Translations under genes and position numbers: made by a program | Source of the DNA: Paramoeba atlantica | Taxonomy: Eukaryota; Protista; Discosea | Reading direction: 5' to 3' | Length of the DNA: 64,000 nt | NCBI GenBank assembly: GCA_977017575.1 | Contig: CDRNVI010000179.1 | Location: 1 to 64,000 of the forward strand | In this document: positions 54,396 to 64,000 of the stretch, one piece after another | Numbering within the stretch: the stretch's first letter is position 1 | Layout of the letters: each line of letters opens with the position of its first letter | The notes under the pieces: model-generated | Database searches by the model: none | Told to the model about the DNA's origin: nothing | The model's input: only the letters and a program-made list of their open reading frames with translations

Positions 54396-57300
54396 ATGAA
54401 TTGGGTCTTGGAAGAGAAAAGGAGAGAGGATGAAGAGAAGAAGGGCCTTTTTTGGGTTGAGCTGACCTCTTATGACCATTTTCAGCTTGAAAAGAGAGTG
54501 GCGATGGTCTCTGGGGGCGAGCTTCCAGGTTGAGTATCAAATTCATCCCAAATCAAATCAAAATATTCACAAAAATCTTTTCAAAACACAGAAGAGAACA
54601 CTGGAAATCCCTCAGCAGCTCAGTTTCGAGTCGTAAGTTGTTGTGGATTATCTTCAATGGATCGAGCGATCTTGGATTCAGTCAAGTTAGTTGAGATTCG
54701 GTCTCTGTCCTCTCCTCTCTCTTTTTCGTCTGATCTACCTCCTGCCCCTCGAACCCCAAGTGAACGAAAAAAGAAATCAACTTCAATCTTTATGAAGTTT
54801 ACAAAGAAAAAAGAAGAAAATTCAACGAAGAAGATCCCCCTGGTTTCATTTATGAATAATTCTTTTCTTCTGTTCCGCTCAAGAACAAGCGTTTCTCACA
54901 TTGACTTCCTTTTCCCCCTCTTTTTTTCAGACCGATTTAGAACGTTCATCCAAATCATTGAGCGCTTTGGACAATTATTTTCCTGATATGTTTATTATTT
55001 ATTCATCAAGAGAACTGCCTGAGATTTTACCGGTGTGGCGGATGTTAATTTCGTTAGTTATCAACAAAGAAAAAGGAGTGACCAACATCACACCCATTGC
55101 CAGTCTTATTCGGCTTGCTGCTCACCGGTTTTTTCTTTCTTTCTTTTCAAATTAGGGAACAAGAATACTAAATATCTACATTTTTTTCACCCCCTTCAGG
55201 TATCAAGTAGATGTGAAATCGATCAAGATGAAAATCACATTGGATCATCATTTAAGTGAAACAGCGTATTTGGATGAGTGGAATTGTTTGAAACCAAGAG
55301 GTCGTCGTCCTTCTTCCTTTCTCGAAAGATCTCCAAAGCAAGAAGAAATTTTCACAGCTTGTGAAGCTCGGTTCCGAAACCTTTTCTTTCTTCCTTTCTT
55401 CTGTTGTTTTGCCGAAACTCAATTTAATTAATTTTTCGTATTTTCAGAATGGTCCGCGTTGTTGACGAAAAATCATTTTCTGGTGTTTTGATTGTGACAT
55501 CAAGTCATGTTAGTTTTTTAGTTGAAGAGGAGTTAAAGGAACCTCCTCTTTGCAAAAGACGAACAAAAAAGGAAAAGGAGAAGGCCGGGAACGTCACAGA
55601 GGAAGAGAGAATGCAAGCATTGAGTGATGTGATAAATCAACTTGAAAAGAAGCACAATCGAATACCAATTCCTTTCTTGTCCGTGATGGCTCTCTGGCAA
55701 AACCATTGTGACTGCTCTGAAAATTGCTCAAATGACATCATCTCTATTCAAACAGTTATCAGTAAGGTACTCTTCTCTCTCTCTCTCTCTCTCTCTCCCC
55801 CCTCTTTTATTAATTTACCATCTCCTGATCTAAAATTTTCCTCTTCTCAGTATTCCATTGTGCTTACTTCTGCTTCTGCTTCAAAACAAGCATCTATTGG
55901 CTATCTCATCGATCAACTCTGGAGATGGGTGATGGTATTAACACTACAAAGAGCAAAGGACACTTTCGACACTTTTGGTTTGGAAAGAAACAAATCAATC
56001 AGTGTGAGAGACTTAAAAAAAATATCGAAAGAAGAGGACGAAGAAAAGAAATATGACACCGACATTCTACCTTTTTATAACATTCCTTTTGAACCGACTG
56101 AATGCGTGGTGAATACCCCTTGCATTTGTTGGGAAAATTATGTATATTTTCCGGGCCAGTTAAAAGCGACCCATGATGGACTAATTTTCCAAAGCGACGC
56201 AGCGATTGATTTAATGTCTTCTTCTCAAACTCAGCGTGGTGAACCACTTGTTTTCTCCATCCAATTTCCAACCATCACAGAGATTATGTTACCTAACCCA
56301 ATCCCAGCAATATCAGAGAGAGAGCGTGCTCACCTCATCCAAATCTCAACTATCAGAGGAAAAAAATTCTTATTTCAAGTTGAACAAGGCGATTCTATTC
56401 TCTTGTTATTCCAATTATGGGCAGTTTCAATTCGATCGCCACATTTTCGCCATGAAGGTCCTTCACTGATGACTCCACCTTCTTTGACTCTTTGTGAAAC
56501 AACACTCTCAAAATCATGGTAATTTTGTTTTGAATTTATTTTTTGTGCATTTTTTTTTTTGTATTTTTCATTTATCATGATAAATTTAGTTCACTTTCAT
56601 TCTTTGGAGGCCAGCAATTAAATTCAAAGATATTGCTGCGCGCTGATGTCCATGTTGATATGTGGCGAGATATCCATTTTCTTCAATCAATCGCGAGTGG
56701 AATCTCAGGTTTGGATTCCTTCTTTCAAAAATATTTACAGAGGCTCAAAAAAAAAAAGTCTTAGAATTTTCTTCTCTTTTAGATTTGCAGAGACCCTTTA
56801 TCTGGCAAGTGATATCAGGGTCATTATCCAAGTACTCAGATTCAATTGCCCATTCACAAAGACAATGCTTGCTTCGATATGTTCCAGAAATTATTTCACG
56901 TGAGAATTATTATCTTCCTCAGGTATTTAAAAATTTCAATCAAAACCCAAAAGAAAGAGAGTGCAAATATATTTGAGATCATTCAAATGATCCTTTTTCT
57001 CATCAAAAAAATATTAATATTCAATTTTAAAAAAAAAATCAAAAAGGGGATTGTAAAAAAACTTGGTTCTACATATGAAGATTATTTATCCAATGCTCGA
57101 AAGAATCACAAAAAACACTTCATGGTTGGTTCATTTCATTTCATTTTTCTACTCTATATTTTAAAAGTATATTTTTGAAATCACCTTTTCACACCACCAA
57201 TTTTGTCTTTCTCTCAAAAAGGGGGAAATTGAAAAAGATTTGTATCGGAGTTTCCCAGAACATCCAATGTTTCAAGAAGATGAAGGAATCGCCTCTCTCC

Positions 57301-58728
57301 GAAGAGTTCTGGTTGCTTTTGGAATTCGAAATCCATCGATTGGTTATTGCCAGTCAATGAATATTCTTGCAGCTTTCTTATTATGTTGGATGGATGAGGT
57401 TTTTGCATATTTTTTTCCCAGAATTTTTTAATCTCTCCTTCTCATTTTTCAAGTAGCAAAATGCTTTTTGGTTGCTTTGTGTTATCACTGAAAACCTCAT
57501 GATTGATTATTTTAATGCTTCAATGACTGGAGCTTGTCTTGATCAAAAGGTTTGAAAAGAAAATTTGGTCTTTAGAAAATAGAAAAGAAAGAAAAAAAAA
57601 AGGGGATCAAAGAAAAAATCAGGGAAGATTCCCATTTTCTTCAAAATGTGTAATTTTTTTTTGTCTCAAAAAAAGGTTCTTCAAGATTTGGTTGCTGAGT
57701 TACTCCCAGGACTGAACGATCATCTCCTTCTCCTCGGCTCTCAAAATTTACTTCCAGTTGTGACAACACAATGGTTTTTGTGCTTGTTCATTCAGTGCCT
57801 CCCTTGGCCGGTGGTGTTGCGGATTCTTGACAACTTTTTTGCGATCGGGATCCATTATCTTTTCCAGACAACTCTCGGATTGTTGGAATATTACTCGAAT
57901 GCAATTTTAGAGATGGAAGATAGTGCAGAAGTTCTGATCCTTTTACGGAGTTGTGAAGAAGTTGAAGTTGAAGAGCTATTTCGGTGTATTGAAAAGTTTC
58001 GGTTGTCTGTGACCTCAAGTGTAATCAAGGAGTTGAGATCTGTTCATCGACCAGAATTGTTGAATCATATCGAAAACACAATTGATGAGAAGAGCGAGAA
58101 CGACGCTGAAATGGAAGATCAATCCATGACCAAAGAAGAAGAACAGCAACTAAAAGTGAAAGAGGATAAACCACTCAAAAGCAAGAAGTCAAAATTGGCT
58201 TCTATCTCTGTGCCGTCTTTAGCCAACATTAACCGAGCAGGCAAAACCGATGTCATCCAACAACAACAGAAGAAACTCACGCCCACCACACCTTTGGGGG
58301 TCAGTCCTGTTGGGAAATTCCAATCCAGAGAAAAATCAGTCCGCCATCGCTCTCTCTCAAGTGAAGTGGATACCACCGAAGCAAGAGGAGCGATTACAAG
58401 GGGGGAGACTTTGCAACTCTTCCATATTGCAGATAATCTTCGCCATGGACGGTTCGAAAAGGCTTCAGGCAGAGGGTCTGGTTCTTTTTCTGCAAGAAAG
58501 AGTTCTGGTTCTTCACCAAGATGGGATATTGAGGAATTAAAAGATTTTTCTCCGAGCCTCTCAAGATCAAGAGCTGCGACAACTTATGAGAGAAGCCGAC
58601 TCCAAGATTCATCACCAACTTTTGAAAAAGACAAGAAAGAACAAAAAGGAGGGAATGAAGAGAATGAAGCACAAGTAAGGGAAGAAAAAAAGGGAGAAGC
58701 AAAAAGAAACTTAAATAAAACTCCATGA
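54396..58728 (+). CDS. GRAM-domain TBC RabGAP (TBC1D8/9, Gyp2-like); start uncertain
   Basis: GRAM-like [16 protein letters not shown]; [13 protein letters not shown] (R finger), [12 protein letters not shown] (Q finger), [30 protein letters not shown]. Confidence 0.9.
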
Positions 58729-58843
58729 CAAAAAAAACATTATTTCCTGGAGGAAAAGAGAGATTTTTGATTCCCAATGTCAGAGAAGGGAAAACCTAAT
58801 TTTTTTCTTTCTTTTCATCAGGTTATTATCTTTATTTCTTCAA

Positions 58844-61629
58844 TCATTGATATTCTGTTTCTGTTCTCAAATTATCAAAAACTTGAATTGTTTGTCGAGC
58901 TGGTTTTATCGTCCGTCCCTACAACAACCAAAAAAATCAAAAAAATTGAAAAAAAAGGAAAATATCAACAAAAAGAAGAGAAAAAAAGAAATAAAACCTT
59001 CAATTGGATGATCAATTCAACAATGTTACGATTTTTCGCAACATCAAGGACTGTTTTCCCAACCTAACACAAAAAAAGGAAAGAAAGTTTCAAAAAAAAA
59101 ACCACTCCAACCCCCTCTATCCTCCCCCATTTCCCCCACCCACCACAATCCAACAATTCACAAATCAAAAAGAAAATGAAAACTTTGGTTTTACGCTCAA
59201 CATTGGATCCATGTTCAACAAGAATTTCCACAATTTGTTCAAAACCTTTCCAAGCAGCATAATGAAGAGCGGTCATTCCATACTTTAACAAAAAGAAAGT
59301 TGTTAAACAAAGAATAAAAAAAATAAATATCACACAACACACAACCATTCACAATCAACATGAAACCACAAAGAATAAAATCAAAAAAAGAAAATTAAAA
59401 CTTCATCTTGAAGATGAATGTTGGATCCATGGTCAATAAGAATCATCACAATTCCTTCATGACCATTCTTAGCAGCAACATGAAGAGCAGTCTGTTTGTC
59501 CTAACACAAAAAGAAGTTTTTTTAAAAAAAGCAAAACAAAGCACACCACTCTCCATCCTATCTGAATTCCAAAGAATTAACAACAATTAAAGCCAAAAAA
59601 AGAAAATCAAAACTTTGTTTTGTTGCTGAATGTTGCACCCATGTTCCACAAATATTTTCACAATTTCCCCAAAACCATGGAGTGTTGCCCAGTGAAGAGG
59701 GGGATGTCCATCCTAACAAAAAAAGGGGTTTCAAAAGAACAAAAAACAAAATGAAATCACAATCCACCATTCACCCACCCTCCATCACAATAGCAAACAA
59801 CCAAGAATGAATTACAAACAAAAGTGAGAAATAAATAAAATGAAAATTAAAAATAAACTTGATTTTGAAGATGACTGTGAGCACCATGTTCAAGTAAAAT
59901 TTTTACAATTTCTCCAAAACCTTTTGCAGCATAGTGAAGAGCGGTGAATCCCTTCTGAACAAAAATAAGTTAAAAAAAAAAGAACAAATTACACAATCAC
60001 ACCTTTCATCGCACCCTCCTATCATCAACAGAACCAAAGAATCAAAATTTGAGAGAAACAAAAAAAAAAGAAAACTTGATCTTGGAGATTAATATTGGCA
60101 CCAAGTTCAATCAGAATTTCGACAATTTCTTGATTCCCATTGAATGCAGCAAAGTGGAGAGCAGATTTTTTTCCTTGAAAAACCTAAAAAAACAAAAACA
60201 AAAAAATAAATCACAATCATGAAAAAGAAAACTTTATCTTGAAGATGAACATTGGATCCATGTTCAAGAAGAATTTTCACAATTCCTTCAAAACCATGCC
60301 CAGCAGCGAGGTGCAGAACAGTCTTTCGATCCTGAACAAAAAGAAGTTTTTTTCAAAAAAAAGAGAAAGAGAAAGAAACAAAAGAGAAGGAGAAGAGAAG
60401 AGAAGAGAAGAGAAGAGAAGAGAAGAGAAGAGAAGAGAAGAGAAGAGAAGAGAAGAGAAGAGAAGAGAAGAGAAGAGAAAAAGAAAAAAAGAAAGAAAAA
60501 ACCTTGTCATTGTACTGGAAATTGAAATCGATTTTTTGTTTTCTTTCTTGAAGAAGAAGATTGACAAATTCTTTATCCCCTTTCTCGACAGCATCCAAAA
60601 AACTGGTTCACAATTTGTTCATAACCTCTCTCAGCAGCAATGTGAAGAGCGGCCCATCCATTCTTTAACAAAAAGAAGTGAAAGAATAAAAACAAAATAA
60701 ATATCACACAACCAACAAAACAACATGAACATCCAAGAATTTAACCACAACAAACAAAAATGAAAACAAACAAAAAAAGAAAATCAAAACTTCATCTTGA
60801 AGATCAACACTGGATCCATGTTCAAGAAGAATGTTCGCAACTTCTTCAAAACCATAGTCAGCAGCATGGTGAAGAGCGGTCCAGCCATGCTTAACAAAAA
60901 GAAATTGGTCAAAGAAAAAAAACAAATATCACAGAACATGAACAACCAAGAGAGTTCACCACAACAAAGAGATTATCTCTTTAAAATGCAAAATCAAAAT
61001 CAAAAAAAAAAGAAAATCAAAAACATTATCTTGAAGATCAACATTGGATCCATGTTCAATCAGAATCTTCGCAATTCCTTCAAAAGAATTGTCAGCAGCT
61101 TTATGAAGAGGAGTCATTCCATCCTTAACAAAAAGAACTGATAAAAAGAACAAAACAGAACAAAATATCACACAACATGAACAAAGCCAAGAATTTAACC
61201 ACAACAAATAAAACAAAGAAAAATCAAAAAGCAAAAAAGAAAAAAGCAAAACTTTGGTTTGAAGATCAACATCGGATCCCTGTTCAAGAAGAATCTTCAC
61301 AATTTCTTCAAAACCTCTGTCAGCAGCACAGTGAAGAGCGGTTATTCCATCCTTGAACAAAAAGAAGGGTTCACAAAACAAGAACAAGAACAAGAGAGAA
61401 AAGAAAAAAAGAACAAAAGAAGAAAAAAAAGAGAGAAAAGGGGAACAGAGAGGTTAGAAAATAGTTTTTGAAAAAAAACCTTGTCATTGAACTTGAAGTT
61501 GATATCAAGTTTGAATTGTTCGTTTTCTTTTCCAAGAAGAAGAGCTTTGACAACTTCTTCATCTCCATTCTCAACACCTTCAAAAAGATTCTTTGTTTCT
61601 TTGTTTGGACTTTCTTCTTCTCCATCCAT
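58844..61629 (-). CDS. Ankyrin-repeat protein A: N-cap exon (61629-61480), about 10 single-repeat phase-0 exons, C-cap exons; out-of-frame fused exon at 60662-60503
   Basis: 99-nt exons at 61351-61253, 61123-61025, 60889-60791 and 60331-60233, plus further exons to about 59185, each giving xGxTALHxAAxxGxxEIVKILxEHGxxV. Confidence 0.88.
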
Positions 61630-61755
61630 TCTTCTTCTTGTGATCTTTTTTGCAGAAGAGAGAATTGGAGAAAAGCTTGGAGGGGGACACTCCAATAATG
61701 GTGTCACCTTTTCTTTTCTCTTTCTCTTGATCACAAACAAACAGAAAGAAGAAGA

Positions 61756-63060
61756 ATGGATGGAGAAGAAGAAGGTCCAAACAAAGAAACAAAGGATTTT
61801 TTTGAAAGTGTTGGGAAAGGAGATGAAGAAGTTGTCAAATTTCTTCTTCAAAAACAATTCAAACTTGATATCAACTTCAAGTTTAAGGACAAGGTTTTTC
61901 AGAAACAATTTTCTTTTCCTTTTTTTTCTTTCTTTCTTTCTTTTCTTTTCTCTCTTGGTTCTTTGTTTCTTTTTTTCACAATTTCTTTTTTGTGAAGTAT
62001 GGACGGACTGCTCTTCACAGAGCTGCTTACTATGGTTTTGAAGAAATTGTGAAGATTCTTCTTGAACATGGAGCCAATGGTGATCTTCAAGAGGAAGTTT
62101 TGATTTTTCTGTTTTGATTTTTTTTTGTTGTTGTGGCTAAATTCTTGGAGGTTCATGTTGTTCTGTTGGTTGTGATACTTATTTCTTTTAAATAATTTCT
62201 TTTTGTTCAGTGTGGCTGGACTGCTCTTCACTATGTTACTTTTGAAGGTTTAGAAAGAATTGTGAAAATTCTTCTTGAACATGGATCTAATGTTCATCTT
62301 CAAGATAAAGTTTTCTTTTCCATTTTCTTTTTTCTTTTTTCTCTCTTTGTTTTTTGAGTTTGATTTTCTTTTTGTTCAGGATGGAGAGACTCCTCTTCAC
62401 TATGCTGCTAAACATGGTTATAAAGAAATTGCCCAAATTCTGATTGAACATGGAGCCAATGTTGATTTTCAAGATCATGTTTTCCTTTTTTGATTTTTCT
62501 TTGGTTGTTTGTCATTTTTATATTTTGATTGTTGATGTGTTATTGATTGTTCTGATGGGAATGGAGGGTGTGGTGGGTGAAATGCTGGTGGACTGTCTGA
62601 TTTGTTTTGTGTTCTTTTTTTTTTTTCCATTTTTTTTTGTTAGGATGGTAAGATTGCTCTTCACAAAGCTGCTTCCAGAGGTTTTAAAGAAACTGTGAAA
62701 ATTCTTGTTGAACATGGCTCCAACATTCAACTTGAAGACCAAGTTTTCATTTTCTTTTTTGATATCAAATTTTTGATCATTTTTTTTGTGGTTCTTTTTT
62801 TTTTTGAAACTTTCTTTTTCTTTTTTGTTAGGATGGTAAAACAGCCCTTGATGTTGCAATAGATCAGAGCATTGTTGAATTGATCATCCAATTGAAGGTT
62901 TCATTTTTATTATTTTTTTCATTTTTTTTTATTGAGAAAAAACTCAATAATACAATGGAATAATTTTTCTAGGGTAATGAATGTTACTCATTATCTCACA
63001 TTTGTTTTTTTCTTTTGGTTGCAGGGACAAACAATAAAATCAGCATCGAGGAGAGCTTGA
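61756..63060 (+). CDS. Ankyrin-repeat protein B (inverted paralogue): exons 61756-61893, 61998-62096, 62211-62309, 62380-62478, 62644-62742, 62832-62897, 63025-63060
   Basis: Same N-cap (MDGEEE.PNKETK), four 99-nt ankyrin exons and C-cap (IVELIIQLK|G.TIK.A) as gene A. Confidence 0.9.
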
Positions 63061-63660
63061 GATGAATACCATGAGACAAACTCCTTAACACGTATGATGT
63101 TCCAGATGATTTTGATAAAGACGAATTCCCACTTGTCCACCAAAGGCTGGTTTGAGACTCACCCCAGCCTCTCAACCCAATTTTTTTTTTCTCGCCCAGG
63201 GAGCACTCTGCAAAAAAAATTTACCCTCTTACAGAAGGAATATTTCGAACAAGAAGCCGAAGAGTTTCAAAAATTTTTGTCCGAATGATGTTGTGATGCA
63301 ATATCTTCACCTAATCTCTCAGTCTGTCCTGTTGAATCTCCTAATTCAAAGGGGCAAAAAATTGAGTGTCGTGCGACCCAAATTTCGAATCTAGAAGATT
63401 GGATTGTTGAGCTTGGATCAAAAGTTGCAGCCTTAAAGGAAGGAAGTATTGCAAGAGAAACAATTGAAAAACAAATTTCTTTGAAATGTGCAGAACTTGA
63501 TATGGAGTCGAAGATTTGGACCTTGGGTTCGCTGAGATCGTCCAAAAACATGGGAAGGAGGGAGAGAATCCACCAGTTGGTCTTGAAAATGCATCAAATA
63601 GCGATGATGTTTGTGATTTTGCACAAGCTGGATTGTCCTTTCAAATCCATCAATATCAAT
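63061..63660 (+). pseudogene. Possible frameshifted remnant of a C-terminal domain of ankyrin gene B
   Basis: Non-low-complexity sequence with overlapping partial ORFs, ending tatcaatga (YQ*) like the final codons of gene A. Confidence 0.35.
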
Positions 63661-64000
63661 GATAAAATTATGAAGATGAGCACAATAAGAAAGAATTTCT
63701 GTCTTTTTCTATTTCCTTTTTTTGCTCTTTGGCCCAATCAAAAGAGACAATTATGTCAACAAATCAACATCAACAAAAAGACCGACACCAACAAATCGAT
63801 CAGATTCTGATCCACGCCCTTTTCGTCTTTTTACTAAATGACGGTCGATCTTAAAAAGGAAAAATTTCGAATTTTACCGAAATTAGGAAATGGGGTCACG
63901 CGGTCACCTCCTCGGTTGTTTTTCCAAAAAAAAAAGGGGATGACCAAGATAGCATCTTTTCTTCCTTTGTTTCTCTGTTTTGTGGGATTTCTGATCCATG

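What the first reader, a model, noticed from the sequence alone, without database searches (positions are those of the whole stretch)
58844..63060. Natural DARPin-like library: ankyrin genes built from interchangeable one-repeat, phase-0 exons with hypervariable binding positions
Seen: about 14 ankyrin repeats, nearly all on their own 99-nt exon with phase-0 introns, between dedicated N-cap and C-cap exons. The framework is nearly fixed (TALH.AA..G..EIVKIL.EHG). The residue after LH varies (C,K,H,I,L,F,Y,W,V,Y,R,Y,Y,K), as do the two residues before the conserved Gly (DR,DN,DY,ER,GH,FN,-K,LH,KN,WK,YY,FE,KH,SR) and the hairpin residues. Known: these are the concave-face positions randomised in DARPins, and symmetric exons can be skipped or shuffled without frameshift. 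Inference: a combinatorial recognition system diversified by exon skipping or recombination, possibly for sensing pathogens, symbionts or prey.
Basis: partly seen in the sequence, partly recalled or inferred. Interest (0 to 1): 0.82.

Follow-up and report, generated by a model that had tools for sequence, protein, structure and literature searches.

The report
Cassette-built hypervariable ankyrin gene pair
Two back-to-back genes of a protist encode small ankyrin-repeat "gripping" proteins with one repeat per 99-base exon; they belong to a large family whose target-contacting residues change unusually fast, but RNA shows ordinary in-order splicing and one of the two genes is a broken fusion.

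Summary
Window 58844-63060 holds two head-to-head ankyrin (ANK) genes with 14 repeats: 11 on exact 99-nt phase-0 exons, one of 108 nt, one of 96 nt and one chimeric, lying between N-cap, C-cap and tail exons.

The scan met this family before on at least 8 other pieces of this genome. It has at least 36 N-cap exons and at least 545 candidate repeat exons.

Six positions per repeat are hypervariable. Their non-synonymous divergence is about 4 times framework synonymous divergence family-wide. None of 18 such residues is shared between positional homologues of the two genes here.

New at this locus:
- Exact spliced RNA contigs from two runs join neighbouring exons strictly in order; no listed splice joint with canonical splice ends skips an exon.
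- The minus-strand "10-repeat gene" is two genes fused through a 160-nt chimeric exon (half a repeat plus a partial N-cap). The exon breaks the frame and is included in RNA.
- A 49-nt intron in that gene is retained in RNA.
- A second public assembly has the same exon order.

Best reading: a germline, birth-and-death family of stand-alone ANK binders, diversified by exon+intron cassette duplication and selection on the binding face. The closest parallels are Ectocarpus LRR/TPR exon-shuffled genes and fungal NLR ANK repeats. Splicing-based combinatorics is not supported.

The parts
61756..61893 (+). Plus gene, N-cap exon (46 aa, starts with ATG)
   Evidence: The family profile A1 aligns to the N-terminal capping repeat of designed ANK proteins. 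No Pfam hit.
61998..62096 (+). Plus gene, ANK repeat 1 (99 nt, phase 0)
   Evidence: (PF00023, E 1.7e-9).
62211..62309 (+). Plus gene, ANK repeat 2 (99 nt)
62380..62478 (+). Plus gene, ANK repeat 3 (99 nt)
62644..62742 (+). Plus gene, ANK repeat 4 (99 nt)
62832..62897 (+). Plus gene, C-cap exon (66 nt, 22 aa)
   Evidence: Weak match to DARPin C-caps, GKTAFDISID type.
63025..63060 (+). Plus gene, tail exon with stop. It deviates from the family tail GRTIKPARxKKEN.
61630..61755 (.). 126-nt spacer between the two divergent start codons. It lies inside a 104-nt, 92% inverted repeat (61536-61639 / 61746-61849).
61480..61629 (-). Minus gene, N-cap exon (50 aa)
   Evidence: The splice to R1 is seen in RNA contigs (joint 61350/61479).
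61253..61351 (-). Minus gene, ANK repeat 1 (99 nt)
61025..61123 (-). Minus gene, ANK repeat 2 (99 nt)
60791..60889 (-). Minus gene, ANK repeat 3 (99 nt)
   Evidence: Spliced to the chimeric exon in RNA contigs of X1 and X4.
60503..60662 (-). Chimeric exon, 160 nt. Nucleotides 1-56 are the first half of an ANK repeat (91% identical to a paralogue). Nucleotides ~61-160 are the 3' part of an N-cap exon in the +1 frame. In the incoming frame there is a TAA after 29 codons.
   Evidence: (partial N-cap match, E 1e-3). Included in RNA with 0 mismatches over 60529-60662 in X1 and X4.
60385..60478 (.). (GAGAA)n microsatellite inside the intron after the chimeric exon
   Evidence: One unit shorter in the second assembly.
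60233..60331 (-). Distal array, ANK repeat 5 (99 nt)
60184..60232 (-). 49-nt intron, the shortest of 198 family introns. It is retained in otherwise spliced RNA contigs.
   Evidence: (60076-60267 contiguous in X1, 60076-60261 in X4).
60076..60183 (-). Distal array, ANK repeat 6 (108 nt with an upstream acceptor)
59859..59954 (-). Distal array, ANK repeat 7 (96 nt, one codon short)
   Evidence: Spliced to R6 and R8 in RNA.
59614..59712 (-). Distal array, ANK repeat 8 (99 nt, the most divergent)
59402..59500 (-). Distal array, ANK repeat 9 (99 nt)
59184..59282 (-). Distal array, ANK repeat 10 (99 nt)
58998..59063 (-). Minus strand, C-cap exon (66 nt)
58844..58918 (-). Minus strand, tail exon with stop. 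The family KKEN end is lost and the tail is extended.

Best explanation
The locus holds two members of a large, germline-encoded family of small, stand-alone ankyrin-repeat proteins in an AT-rich protist. Each protein has an N-cap, n ANK repeats, a C-cap and a short tail. There is no signal peptide, no membrane span and no other domain, so the proteins are probably cytosolic.

Each repeat sits on its own phase-0 exon, and the unit of duplication is exon plus intron. The framework builds the usual ANK solenoid. Six positions per repeat vary strongly: exon positions 1, 3, 8, 11, 12 and 33, on the hairpin tip and inner helix. They form a variable concave surface that most likely binds protein targets.

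Diversity arises over evolutionary time in three ways:
- gene duplication, here an inverted duplication giving the head-to-head pair;
- gain and loss of cassettes by unequal recombination;
- fast amino-acid replacement at the six positions.

Turnover follows a birth-and-death pattern. The plus gene is an intact 4-repeat member. The minus 'gene' is two former genes joined by a deletion that made a frame-breaking chimeric exon. It is still transcribed and spliced in the ordinary order, but as assembled it can encode only N-cap + 3.6 repeats.

Shown: the anatomy, family size, site pattern, rate excess, intron homology and splicing order. Inferred: the binding function, the cytosolic location and selection by targets.
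For: - Anatomy and ANK identity.
- Family size: 37 N-cap matches; 545 candidate repeat exons, of which 150 were scored and all were significant.
- Architecture is family-wide: 232 of 239 repeats lie on in-frame AG..GT exons.
- Hypervariable positions have entropy of at least 3.1 bits, against mostly under 1.5 bits for the framework, in 148 unique repeats.
- 42 independent cassette pairs, chosen by intron-flank similarity only: hypervariable dN 0.48, framework dS 0.116 (ratio 4.2, bootstrap range 3.1-6.0), framework dN/dS 0.6.
- Locus-specific test. The two genes are collinear inverted duplicates over N-cap-R1-R2-R3 with their introns. Their positional homologues share 0 of 18 hypervariable residues but 58 of 81 framework residues (Fisher p 8e-9), with hypervariable dN 1.36 against framework dS 0.21.
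- Introns of different cassettes are homologous: 21 of 153 pairs have z>5.
- Consecutive repeat-exon runs range from 2 to 23.
- Chimeric exon.
- RNA shows six minus-strand introns removed exactly, neighbour to neighbour, the chimeric exon included and the 49-nt intron retained.
- A second assembly (ENA ERZ24900291, contig ctg3709l) is 99.66% identical with the same exon number and order.
Against: - No binding partner, location or phenotype is known.
- The rate test compares paralogous repeats. Patchy gene conversion that homogenises the framework could inflate the contrast. The six positions were also picked from the same data set.
- The RNA evidence consists of assembled contigs, which drop rare isoforms, so low-level exon skipping cannot be excluded.
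- No exact RNA contig was listed for the plus gene, so its expression is not shown.
- The distal repeats R5-R10 still score as typical family repeats (24th-62nd percentile). Either the disabling events are recent or that part is still used in a way I did not see.
- The T-run at the junction reads T6 in the window and in the RNA contigs of two runs, but T7 in the second assembly. Neither restores the frame.
Confidence: 0.7

Rival explanations
1. This is an ordinary expanded ANK adaptor family with no recognition role. Surface positions drift because they are unconstrained, while gene conversion and folding constraints keep the framework alike.
For: - Expanded ANK families are common in protists.
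- Framework dN/dS is 0.6, which is not strongly constrained.
- Broken members exist: this locus, and frameshifted repeats in L032 and L039.
- No signalling domain is attached.
Against: - Neutral drift gives dN about equal to dS, not 4-6 times dS.
- The fast positions are the ones that face the binding groove (for the register; PMC4986451 for the same mapping in fungal NLR ANK repeats).
- Aromatic and charged residues are frequent at these positions.
Confidence: 0.17
2. This is the first reader's model: one gene yields many proteins because symmetric one-repeat exons are skipped or chosen in varying combinations during splicing.
For: All repeat exons are phase 0 and multiples of 3, so skipping any of them would keep the frame. 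Skipping the chimeric exon would restore an open frame from R3 into R5.
Against: - Exact spliced contigs from two runs show only neighbour-to-neighbour joints and include the frame-breaking chimeric exon.
- No canonical exon-skipping joint is among the listed joints.
- Splice sites are uniformly strong and introns short, with a median of 109 nt. Established knowledge links such intron-defined genes to intron retention rather than exon skipping, and a retained intron is what is seen.
- Diversity is already present as dozens of germline genes.
Confidence: 0.05
3. Diversity comes from programmed somatic DNA rearrangement of cassettes, as in lamprey VLR genes or as hypothesised for Ectocarpus.
For: - The cassette structure and intron homology would permit it.
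- The locus lies about 18 kb from a telomere.
- Another agent reported two versions of a sister locus in the same cultures (s1-396052, not checked here).
Against: - Both genes are complete in the germline assembly.
- RNA contigs match the genome exactly.
- Two assemblies agree in exon number and order.
- There are no orphan or antisense cassettes in the window or in the 17 kb out to the telomere.
- The only recorded junction is out of frame.
Confidence: 0.03

Closest known systems
[quoted passage not shown] 2012, PMC3341825)
   Same: One repeat per exon; phase-0 exons of equal length; exon shuffling and variable repeat number; high birth and death rates; diversifying selection on the repeat domain; proposed recognition role.
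   Different: The repeat type here is ANK, not LRR or TPR. No ROC-COR or NB-ARC signalling domain is attached. No spare exons lie in introns or on the opposite strand at this locus. The organism is a different protist.
Fungal NLRs with ANK repeats (Dyrka et al. 2014, PMC4986451)
   Same: ANK repeats whose variable, positively selected sites lie on the concave face (inner helix and hairpin). Repeat number changes by recombination.
   Different: Fungal repeats are over 85% identical within a gene, lie in a single exon and are joined to NACHT/NB-ARC and effector domains. Here repeats average 54% identity, each has its own exon, and the proteins are ANK only.
DARPins (designed ankyrin repeat proteins)
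   Same: N-cap, internal repeats and C-cap build. Single exons match DARPin modules and the caps match designed caps weakly. Five of the six natural hypervariable positions equal randomised positions 2, 3, 5, 13 and 14 (the list of positions is from my memory of Binz et al. 2003; the register is).
   Different: This family is natural and germline encoded. Position 10 (after LH) varies here but is Leu in DARPins, and DARPin position 33 is a conserved Gln here. A family-specific acidic N-terminus and a conserved tail exon are present.
Vertebrate ankyrin genes ANK1-3 (from memory, not checked here)
   Same: Many of the 24 membrane-binding repeats are encoded by single 99-bp exons, so one repeat per exon is not new for ANK.
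   Different: Those are single conserved genes with fixed repeat number and no hypervariability.
Lamprey VLR assembly and insect Dscam exon choice
   Same: Diversity built from repeat or exon cassettes.
   Different: Both make diversity somatically, by gene-conversion-like assembly or by mutually exclusive splicing. Here RNA follows the germline order and includes every exon seen.

Membership tests
Ankyrin repeat (Pfam PF00023) | 33-residue helix-turn-helix repeat with the TxLH and GxxxIVxxLL signature, scoring above the curated cut-off | tested here: met
   all eight single repeat exons tested score 26.8-46.2 bits against a cut-off of 21.1, with exon residues 1-33 aligned to profile positions 1-33 where the match is full-length; matches to ankyrin-1/2 and DARPin chains.
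Capped ANK domain (DARPin-like NxC build) | Dedicated N-terminal and C-terminal capping repeats around the internal repeats | tested here: met
   N-cap profile positions 13-31 align to residues 6-24 of designed ANK proteins (their N-cap); the C-cap aligns weakly (E 0.2) to DARPin C-caps; the C-cap exon is conserved in 19 family genes.
Capped ANK domain (DARPin-like NxC build) | Variation confined to DARPin-randomised positions 2, 3, 5, 13, 14, 33 | tested here: inconclusive
   five of the six coincide. Position 10 also varies, and position 33 is conserved Gln (81%). The list of randomised positions is from memory.
Exon-shuffled repeat receptors (Ectocarpus type) | One repeat per phase-0 exon of uniform length | tested here: met
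Exon-shuffled repeat receptors (Ectocarpus type) | Diversifying selection on the repeat domain | tested here: met
   (paralogue-based, so indicative only).
Exon-shuffled repeat receptors (Ectocarpus type) | Repeat domain joined to a signalling module (ROC-COR or NB-ARC) | tested here: not met
   the genes start at an N-cap ATG and stop after the tail exon, with no other domain.
Exon-shuffled repeat receptors (Ectocarpus type) | Spare repeat exons in introns or on the non-coding strand | tested here: not met
   only the 14 annotated repeats are found in the 64-kb window, and none in the 17 kb out to the telomere.
Fungal NLR high-internal-conservation ANK repeats | Repeats over 85% identical within a gene | tested here: not met
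   mean 54% identity, maximum 67%.
Fungal NLR high-internal-conservation ANK repeats | NACHT or NB-ARC nucleotide-binding domain | tested here: not met
Fungal NLR high-internal-conservation ANK repeats | Repeat-number polymorphism between strains | tested here: inconclusive
   two assemblies agree, but they may derive from the same culture.
Splicing-based diversity (Dscam type) | Alternative inclusion of cassette exons in mRNA | tested here: not met
   only neighbour-to-neighbour joints in exact contigs. Contigs cannot exclude rare forms.
Somatic cassette assembly (VLR type) | Incomplete germline gene completed from flanking cassettes | tested here: not met
   the plus gene is complete in the germline and there are no flanking spare cassettes.

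The most novel reading that the evidence does not exclude
The family is a germline-encoded intracellular recognition repertoire of an amoeboid protist. Dozens of stand-alone ANK binders would have binding faces driven by an arms race with prey, symbionts, viruses or mobile elements. They would act without any NOD, TIR or kinase module, perhaps coupled to a common pathway through the conserved acidic N-terminus or the KKEN-type tail.
Probability: 0.2. Interest if true: 0.75.

Novelty: new variant of a known kind. Interest (0 to 1): 0.45.

Why it matters
If the fast-changing face really binds varied targets, this would be a natural counterpart of engineered ANK binder libraries. It would also be a third, independent case of repeat-cassette recognition families, after brown-algal LRR/TPR genes and fungal NLR repeats, this time without an attached signalling domain.

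This locus adds two sobering points for the family. Transcripts are spliced in plain genomic order, so the diversity lies in the genome and not in splicing. Cassette recombination also produces broken products, which fits birth-and-death evolution rather than a dedicated diversity machine.

Tried and rejected
- **Out-of-frame query.** The query was one base out of frame. It still found paralogous N-cap DNA. I repeated it in frame and use only the numbers.
- **Intronless retrocopies.** I looked for retrocopies that would record spliced forms. The long open frames near repeats are read-through of T-rich introns, not cDNA copies.
- **Spliced family proteins in the 1.84-billion-protein library.** I searched with an N-cap profile. 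About 30 representatives carry a full N-cap. All 22 that I read are unspliced read-through ORFs. The three I looked up lie on one ENA assembly. The other hits are generic ANK proteins matching only the helix part. No spliced protein with an id was obtained.
- **Joined protein models.** The joined exons have no reference, so I neither searched nor folded them. The structural placement of the variable sites therefore rests on sequence register and on the literature.
- **Organism identity.** An amoeba genome paper that came up (PMC10980511, 27 Mb, 48% GC) does not fit this 45.7-Mb, roughly 35% GC genome. The telomere repeat is TTTAGGG.
- **Frame rescue at the T-run.** T6 (window and RNA contigs) and T7 (second assembly) both leave the chimeric exon out of frame. 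I consider programmed frameshifting unlikely and did not test it.
- **DNA-run joints that skip 62-3025 nt.** They have short sides, non-canonical ends or inserted letters. I take them for cross-alignment of paralogues.
Full report
**What is there**

The window comes from a 45.7-Mb, 248-contig eukaryotic assembly. GC is about 35% around the locus.

Between 58844 and 63060 lie two divergently oriented ankyrin-repeat genes. Their start codons are 126 nt apart.

The plus gene has seven exons: an N-cap exon, four 99-nt repeat exons, a 66-nt C-cap exon and a 36-nt tail exon. It is open throughout and encodes 211 residues.

The minus strand carries, in order:
- an N-cap exon;
- three 99-nt repeat exons;
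- a 160-nt exon discussed below;
- six further repeat exons of 99, 108, 96, 99, 99 and 99 nt;
- a C-cap exon and a tail exon.

Every intron begins GT, mostly GTTTT, and ends AG after a T-rich tract. Every exon except the 160-nt one is a multiple of three, so all introns are phase 0.

Each repeat exon on its own passes the curated threshold of Pfam Ank. Where the match is full-length, exon residue 1 aligns to profile position 1 and residue 33 to position 33. Single exons also match ankyrin-1/2 and DARPin chains.

**It is a family trait, already met by this scan**

The scan has noted the same kind of gene on at least eight other pieces of this genome, five of them followed up. I re-measured the family myself.
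- An in-frame N-cap query finds 37 places.
- A single repeat exon finds 545 candidates; all 150 that were scored are significant.
- In 19 fetched loci plus the window, a profile of the local repeats finds 239 repeats. Of these, 232 are bounded by in-frame AG..GT at the repeat borders: 149 are 99 nt and 60 are 102 nt.
- Runs of consecutive repeat exons range from 2 to 23.
- N-cap, C-cap and tail exons are conserved across members.
- The N-cap profile aligns to the N-terminal cap of designed ANK proteins, and the C-cap aligns weakly to DARPin C-caps.

No other domain, signal peptide or hydrophobic span is present in either gene, judged by direct reading of the exon translations. The products are most likely small cytosolic ANK-only proteins.

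**Where the variation sits, and how fast it arises**

In 148 unique 33-residue repeats, six positions have 16-18 residue types and at least 3.1 bits of entropy: positions 1, 3, 8, 11, 12 and 33. Most framework positions are below 1.5 bits.

The register against DARPin modules maps these six to DARPin positions 3, 5, 10, 13, 14 and 2. From memory of the original design, positions 2, 3, 5, 13, 14 and 33 are randomised in DARPins. Five therefore coincide. The residue after LH is an extra natural variable site, constant Leu in the DARPin modules. DARPin position 33 is a conserved Gln here.

For a rate test I paired cassettes by the similarity of their intron flanks only, not their exons. This gave 42 independent pairs:

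| Measure | Value |
|---|---|
| Non-synonymous divergence, six hypervariable codons | 0.48 |
| Synonymous divergence, framework | 0.116 |
| Ratio (bootstrap range) | 4.2 (3.1-6.0) |
| Framework dN/dS | 0.6 |

This agrees with the 4-5-fold figure reported by earlier agents on other loci.

**A test specific to this locus**

The two genes are collinear inverted duplicates across N-cap, R1, R2 and R3, introns included.

| Segment | Identity between the two genes |
|---|---|
| N-cap | 91% |
| Aligned intron columns | 71% |
| R1 | 81% |
| R2 | 73% |
| R3 | 77% |

The three positional pairs of repeats share 58 of 81 framework residues but 0 of 18 hypervariable residues (Fisher p 8e-9). Hypervariable dN is 1.36 against framework dS of 0.21. 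The change since this duplication is therefore concentrated on the presumed binding face.

A 104-nt stretch covering the start codons and the first halves of the N-caps is 92% identical between the two genes. This points to conversion or constraint there.

**The duplication unit is exon plus intron**

Introns of different cassettes, also between the two genes, align far better than shuffled controls: 21 of 153 pairs have z>5. This matches the copy-and-paste picture drawn by earlier agents.

**The minus 'gene' is a broken fusion**

The 160-nt exon (60503-60662) is a chimera.
- Its first 56 nt are the first half of a repeat exon, 91% identical to a paralogous repeat.
- Its last ~100 nt are the 3' part of an N-cap exon.
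- The two parts are in different frames. Read from R3, the exon runs into a TAA after 29 codons.

This looks like a deletion that joined repeat 4 of one gene to the N-cap of the next gene in tandem. I cannot tell whether the junction itself or a later change in the adjoining T-run broke the frame.

Downstream, the R5-R6 intron is only 49 nt, the shortest of 198 family introns; the next shortest is 62 nt. R6 needs an upstream acceptor, which makes it 108 nt. R7 lacks a codon. The tail has lost the family ending.

The distal repeats themselves still score as ordinary family repeats, at the 24th-62nd percentile. The damage is therefore recent, or that part still has some use.

**RNA**

Of the runs that hold the locus, X1 (2015) and X4 (2023) contain intron-less contigs that match the exons exactly. 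X2 and X3 behave as DNA.

The exact contigs join:
- R9-R8-R7-R6 in one piece, with a separate joint R10-R9;
- R3 to the chimeric exon;
- N-cap to R1.

Each joint lies at the predicted GT..AG borders and always joins neighbour to neighbour. The same contigs run straight through the 49-nt intron, so it is retained. The chimeric exon, with its T6 run over 60529-60662, is present with no mismatch in both runs.

No joint with canonical ends that skips an exon is among those listed. The odd joints listed have short sides, foreign letters or non-canonical ends, and I take them for paralogue cross-alignment.

Three limits apply:
- These are assembled contigs, so rare isoforms would be lost.
- A masked repeat hid the chimeric-exon-to-R5 splice.
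- No exact contig was listed for the plus gene.

**A second assembly**

The plus-gene N-cap read-through ORF is on record in ENA assembly ERZ24900291. That contig aligns to window 55744-64000 at 99.66%, with the same exons in the same order. The 20 differences break down as follows:
- mostly homopolymer lengths, including T7 instead of T6 in the chimeric exon, which also does not restore the frame;
- one GAGAA unit fewer in the microsatellite;
- five substitutions;
- a 5-nt deletion inside minus R1.

Whether this assembly is an independent isolate is unknown. It is therefore weak evidence on strain variation.

**Reading**

The data fit a germline repertoire that evolves by three processes: gene and cassette duplication and loss, fast replacement at six binding-face positions, and frequent death of members.

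They do not fit diversification by splicing, and they give no sign of somatic assembly. There are no spare cassettes in the window or in the 17 kb out to the telomere. The contig ends in TTTAGGG repeats about 18 kb from the locus.

**Comparison with what is known**

The closest published parallels are two:
- Fungal NLR ANK repeats have hypervariable concave-face sites and repeat-number polymorphism (PMC4986451).

The present family differs from both in three respects: it is ANK and one-exon-per-repeat at once, it is only moderately alike between repeats (54%), and it lacks any signalling domain.

My literature searches found no description of an ANK family of this kind.

The joined (spliced) protein models have no reference. 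All searches were made exon by exon.

Noticed in passing
window 58844-58918 and 63025-63060; L033-L049: Most family members end in a conserved tail exon encoding GRTIKPAR-x-KKEN. This is a KKXX-like C-terminus, and such motifs bind COPI when they sit on membrane proteins. Both genes in this window deviate: one ends SASRRA, the other is extended by 12 residues.
   Followed up: partly
window 60385-60478: A (GAGAA)n microsatellite of about 19 units sits in the intron after the chimeric exon. It is one unit shorter in the ENA assembly.
   Followed up: partly
L051 7000-7395 (= contig C179 80,4xx-81395): The contig ends in a long TTTAGGG telomere tract, so the ankyrin pair lies about 18-22 kb from a chromosome end. 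Other family clusters sit both near contig ends and in contig interiors.
   Followed up: partly
window 61536-61639 / 61746-61849: A 104-nt inverted repeat, 92% identical, covers both start codons, 10 nt of leader and the first halves of the N-caps. This is much more alike than the rest of the duplicated genes (about 75%), which suggests local gene conversion or a shared control element.
   Followed up: partly
L042, L046, L048 (contigs C191, C201, C206): A second subfamily has 102-nt exons (34-residue repeats of the TPLFIAAQxGHEQIVQxLLEKGKxNVDL type). Its T-rich introns are often multiples of three and free of stops, so whole arrays read as long false ORFs.
   Followed up: no
window 61329-61333 (minus R1) versus L054: The ENA assembly lacks 5 nt (CAGTG on the plus strand) inside minus-gene repeat 1, which would break that exon. 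It could be a real allele or an assembly error. The RNA contigs listed showed no such gap.
   Followed up: partly
protein P0052: In one family member in the public protein library, the N-cap and first repeat are contiguous in a single open frame. The intron between them is absent there.
   Followed up: no
L032 and L039: Other family loci contain repeat exons with single-base frameshifts. Decaying members are therefore not confined to this window.
   Followed up: no
window 57646-58728 / L054 1899-2972: The gene just upstream of the minus-strand tail exon carries a RabGAP-TBC domain, according to the Pfam marks on the ENA contig. It is unrelated to the ankyrin family.
   Followed up: no
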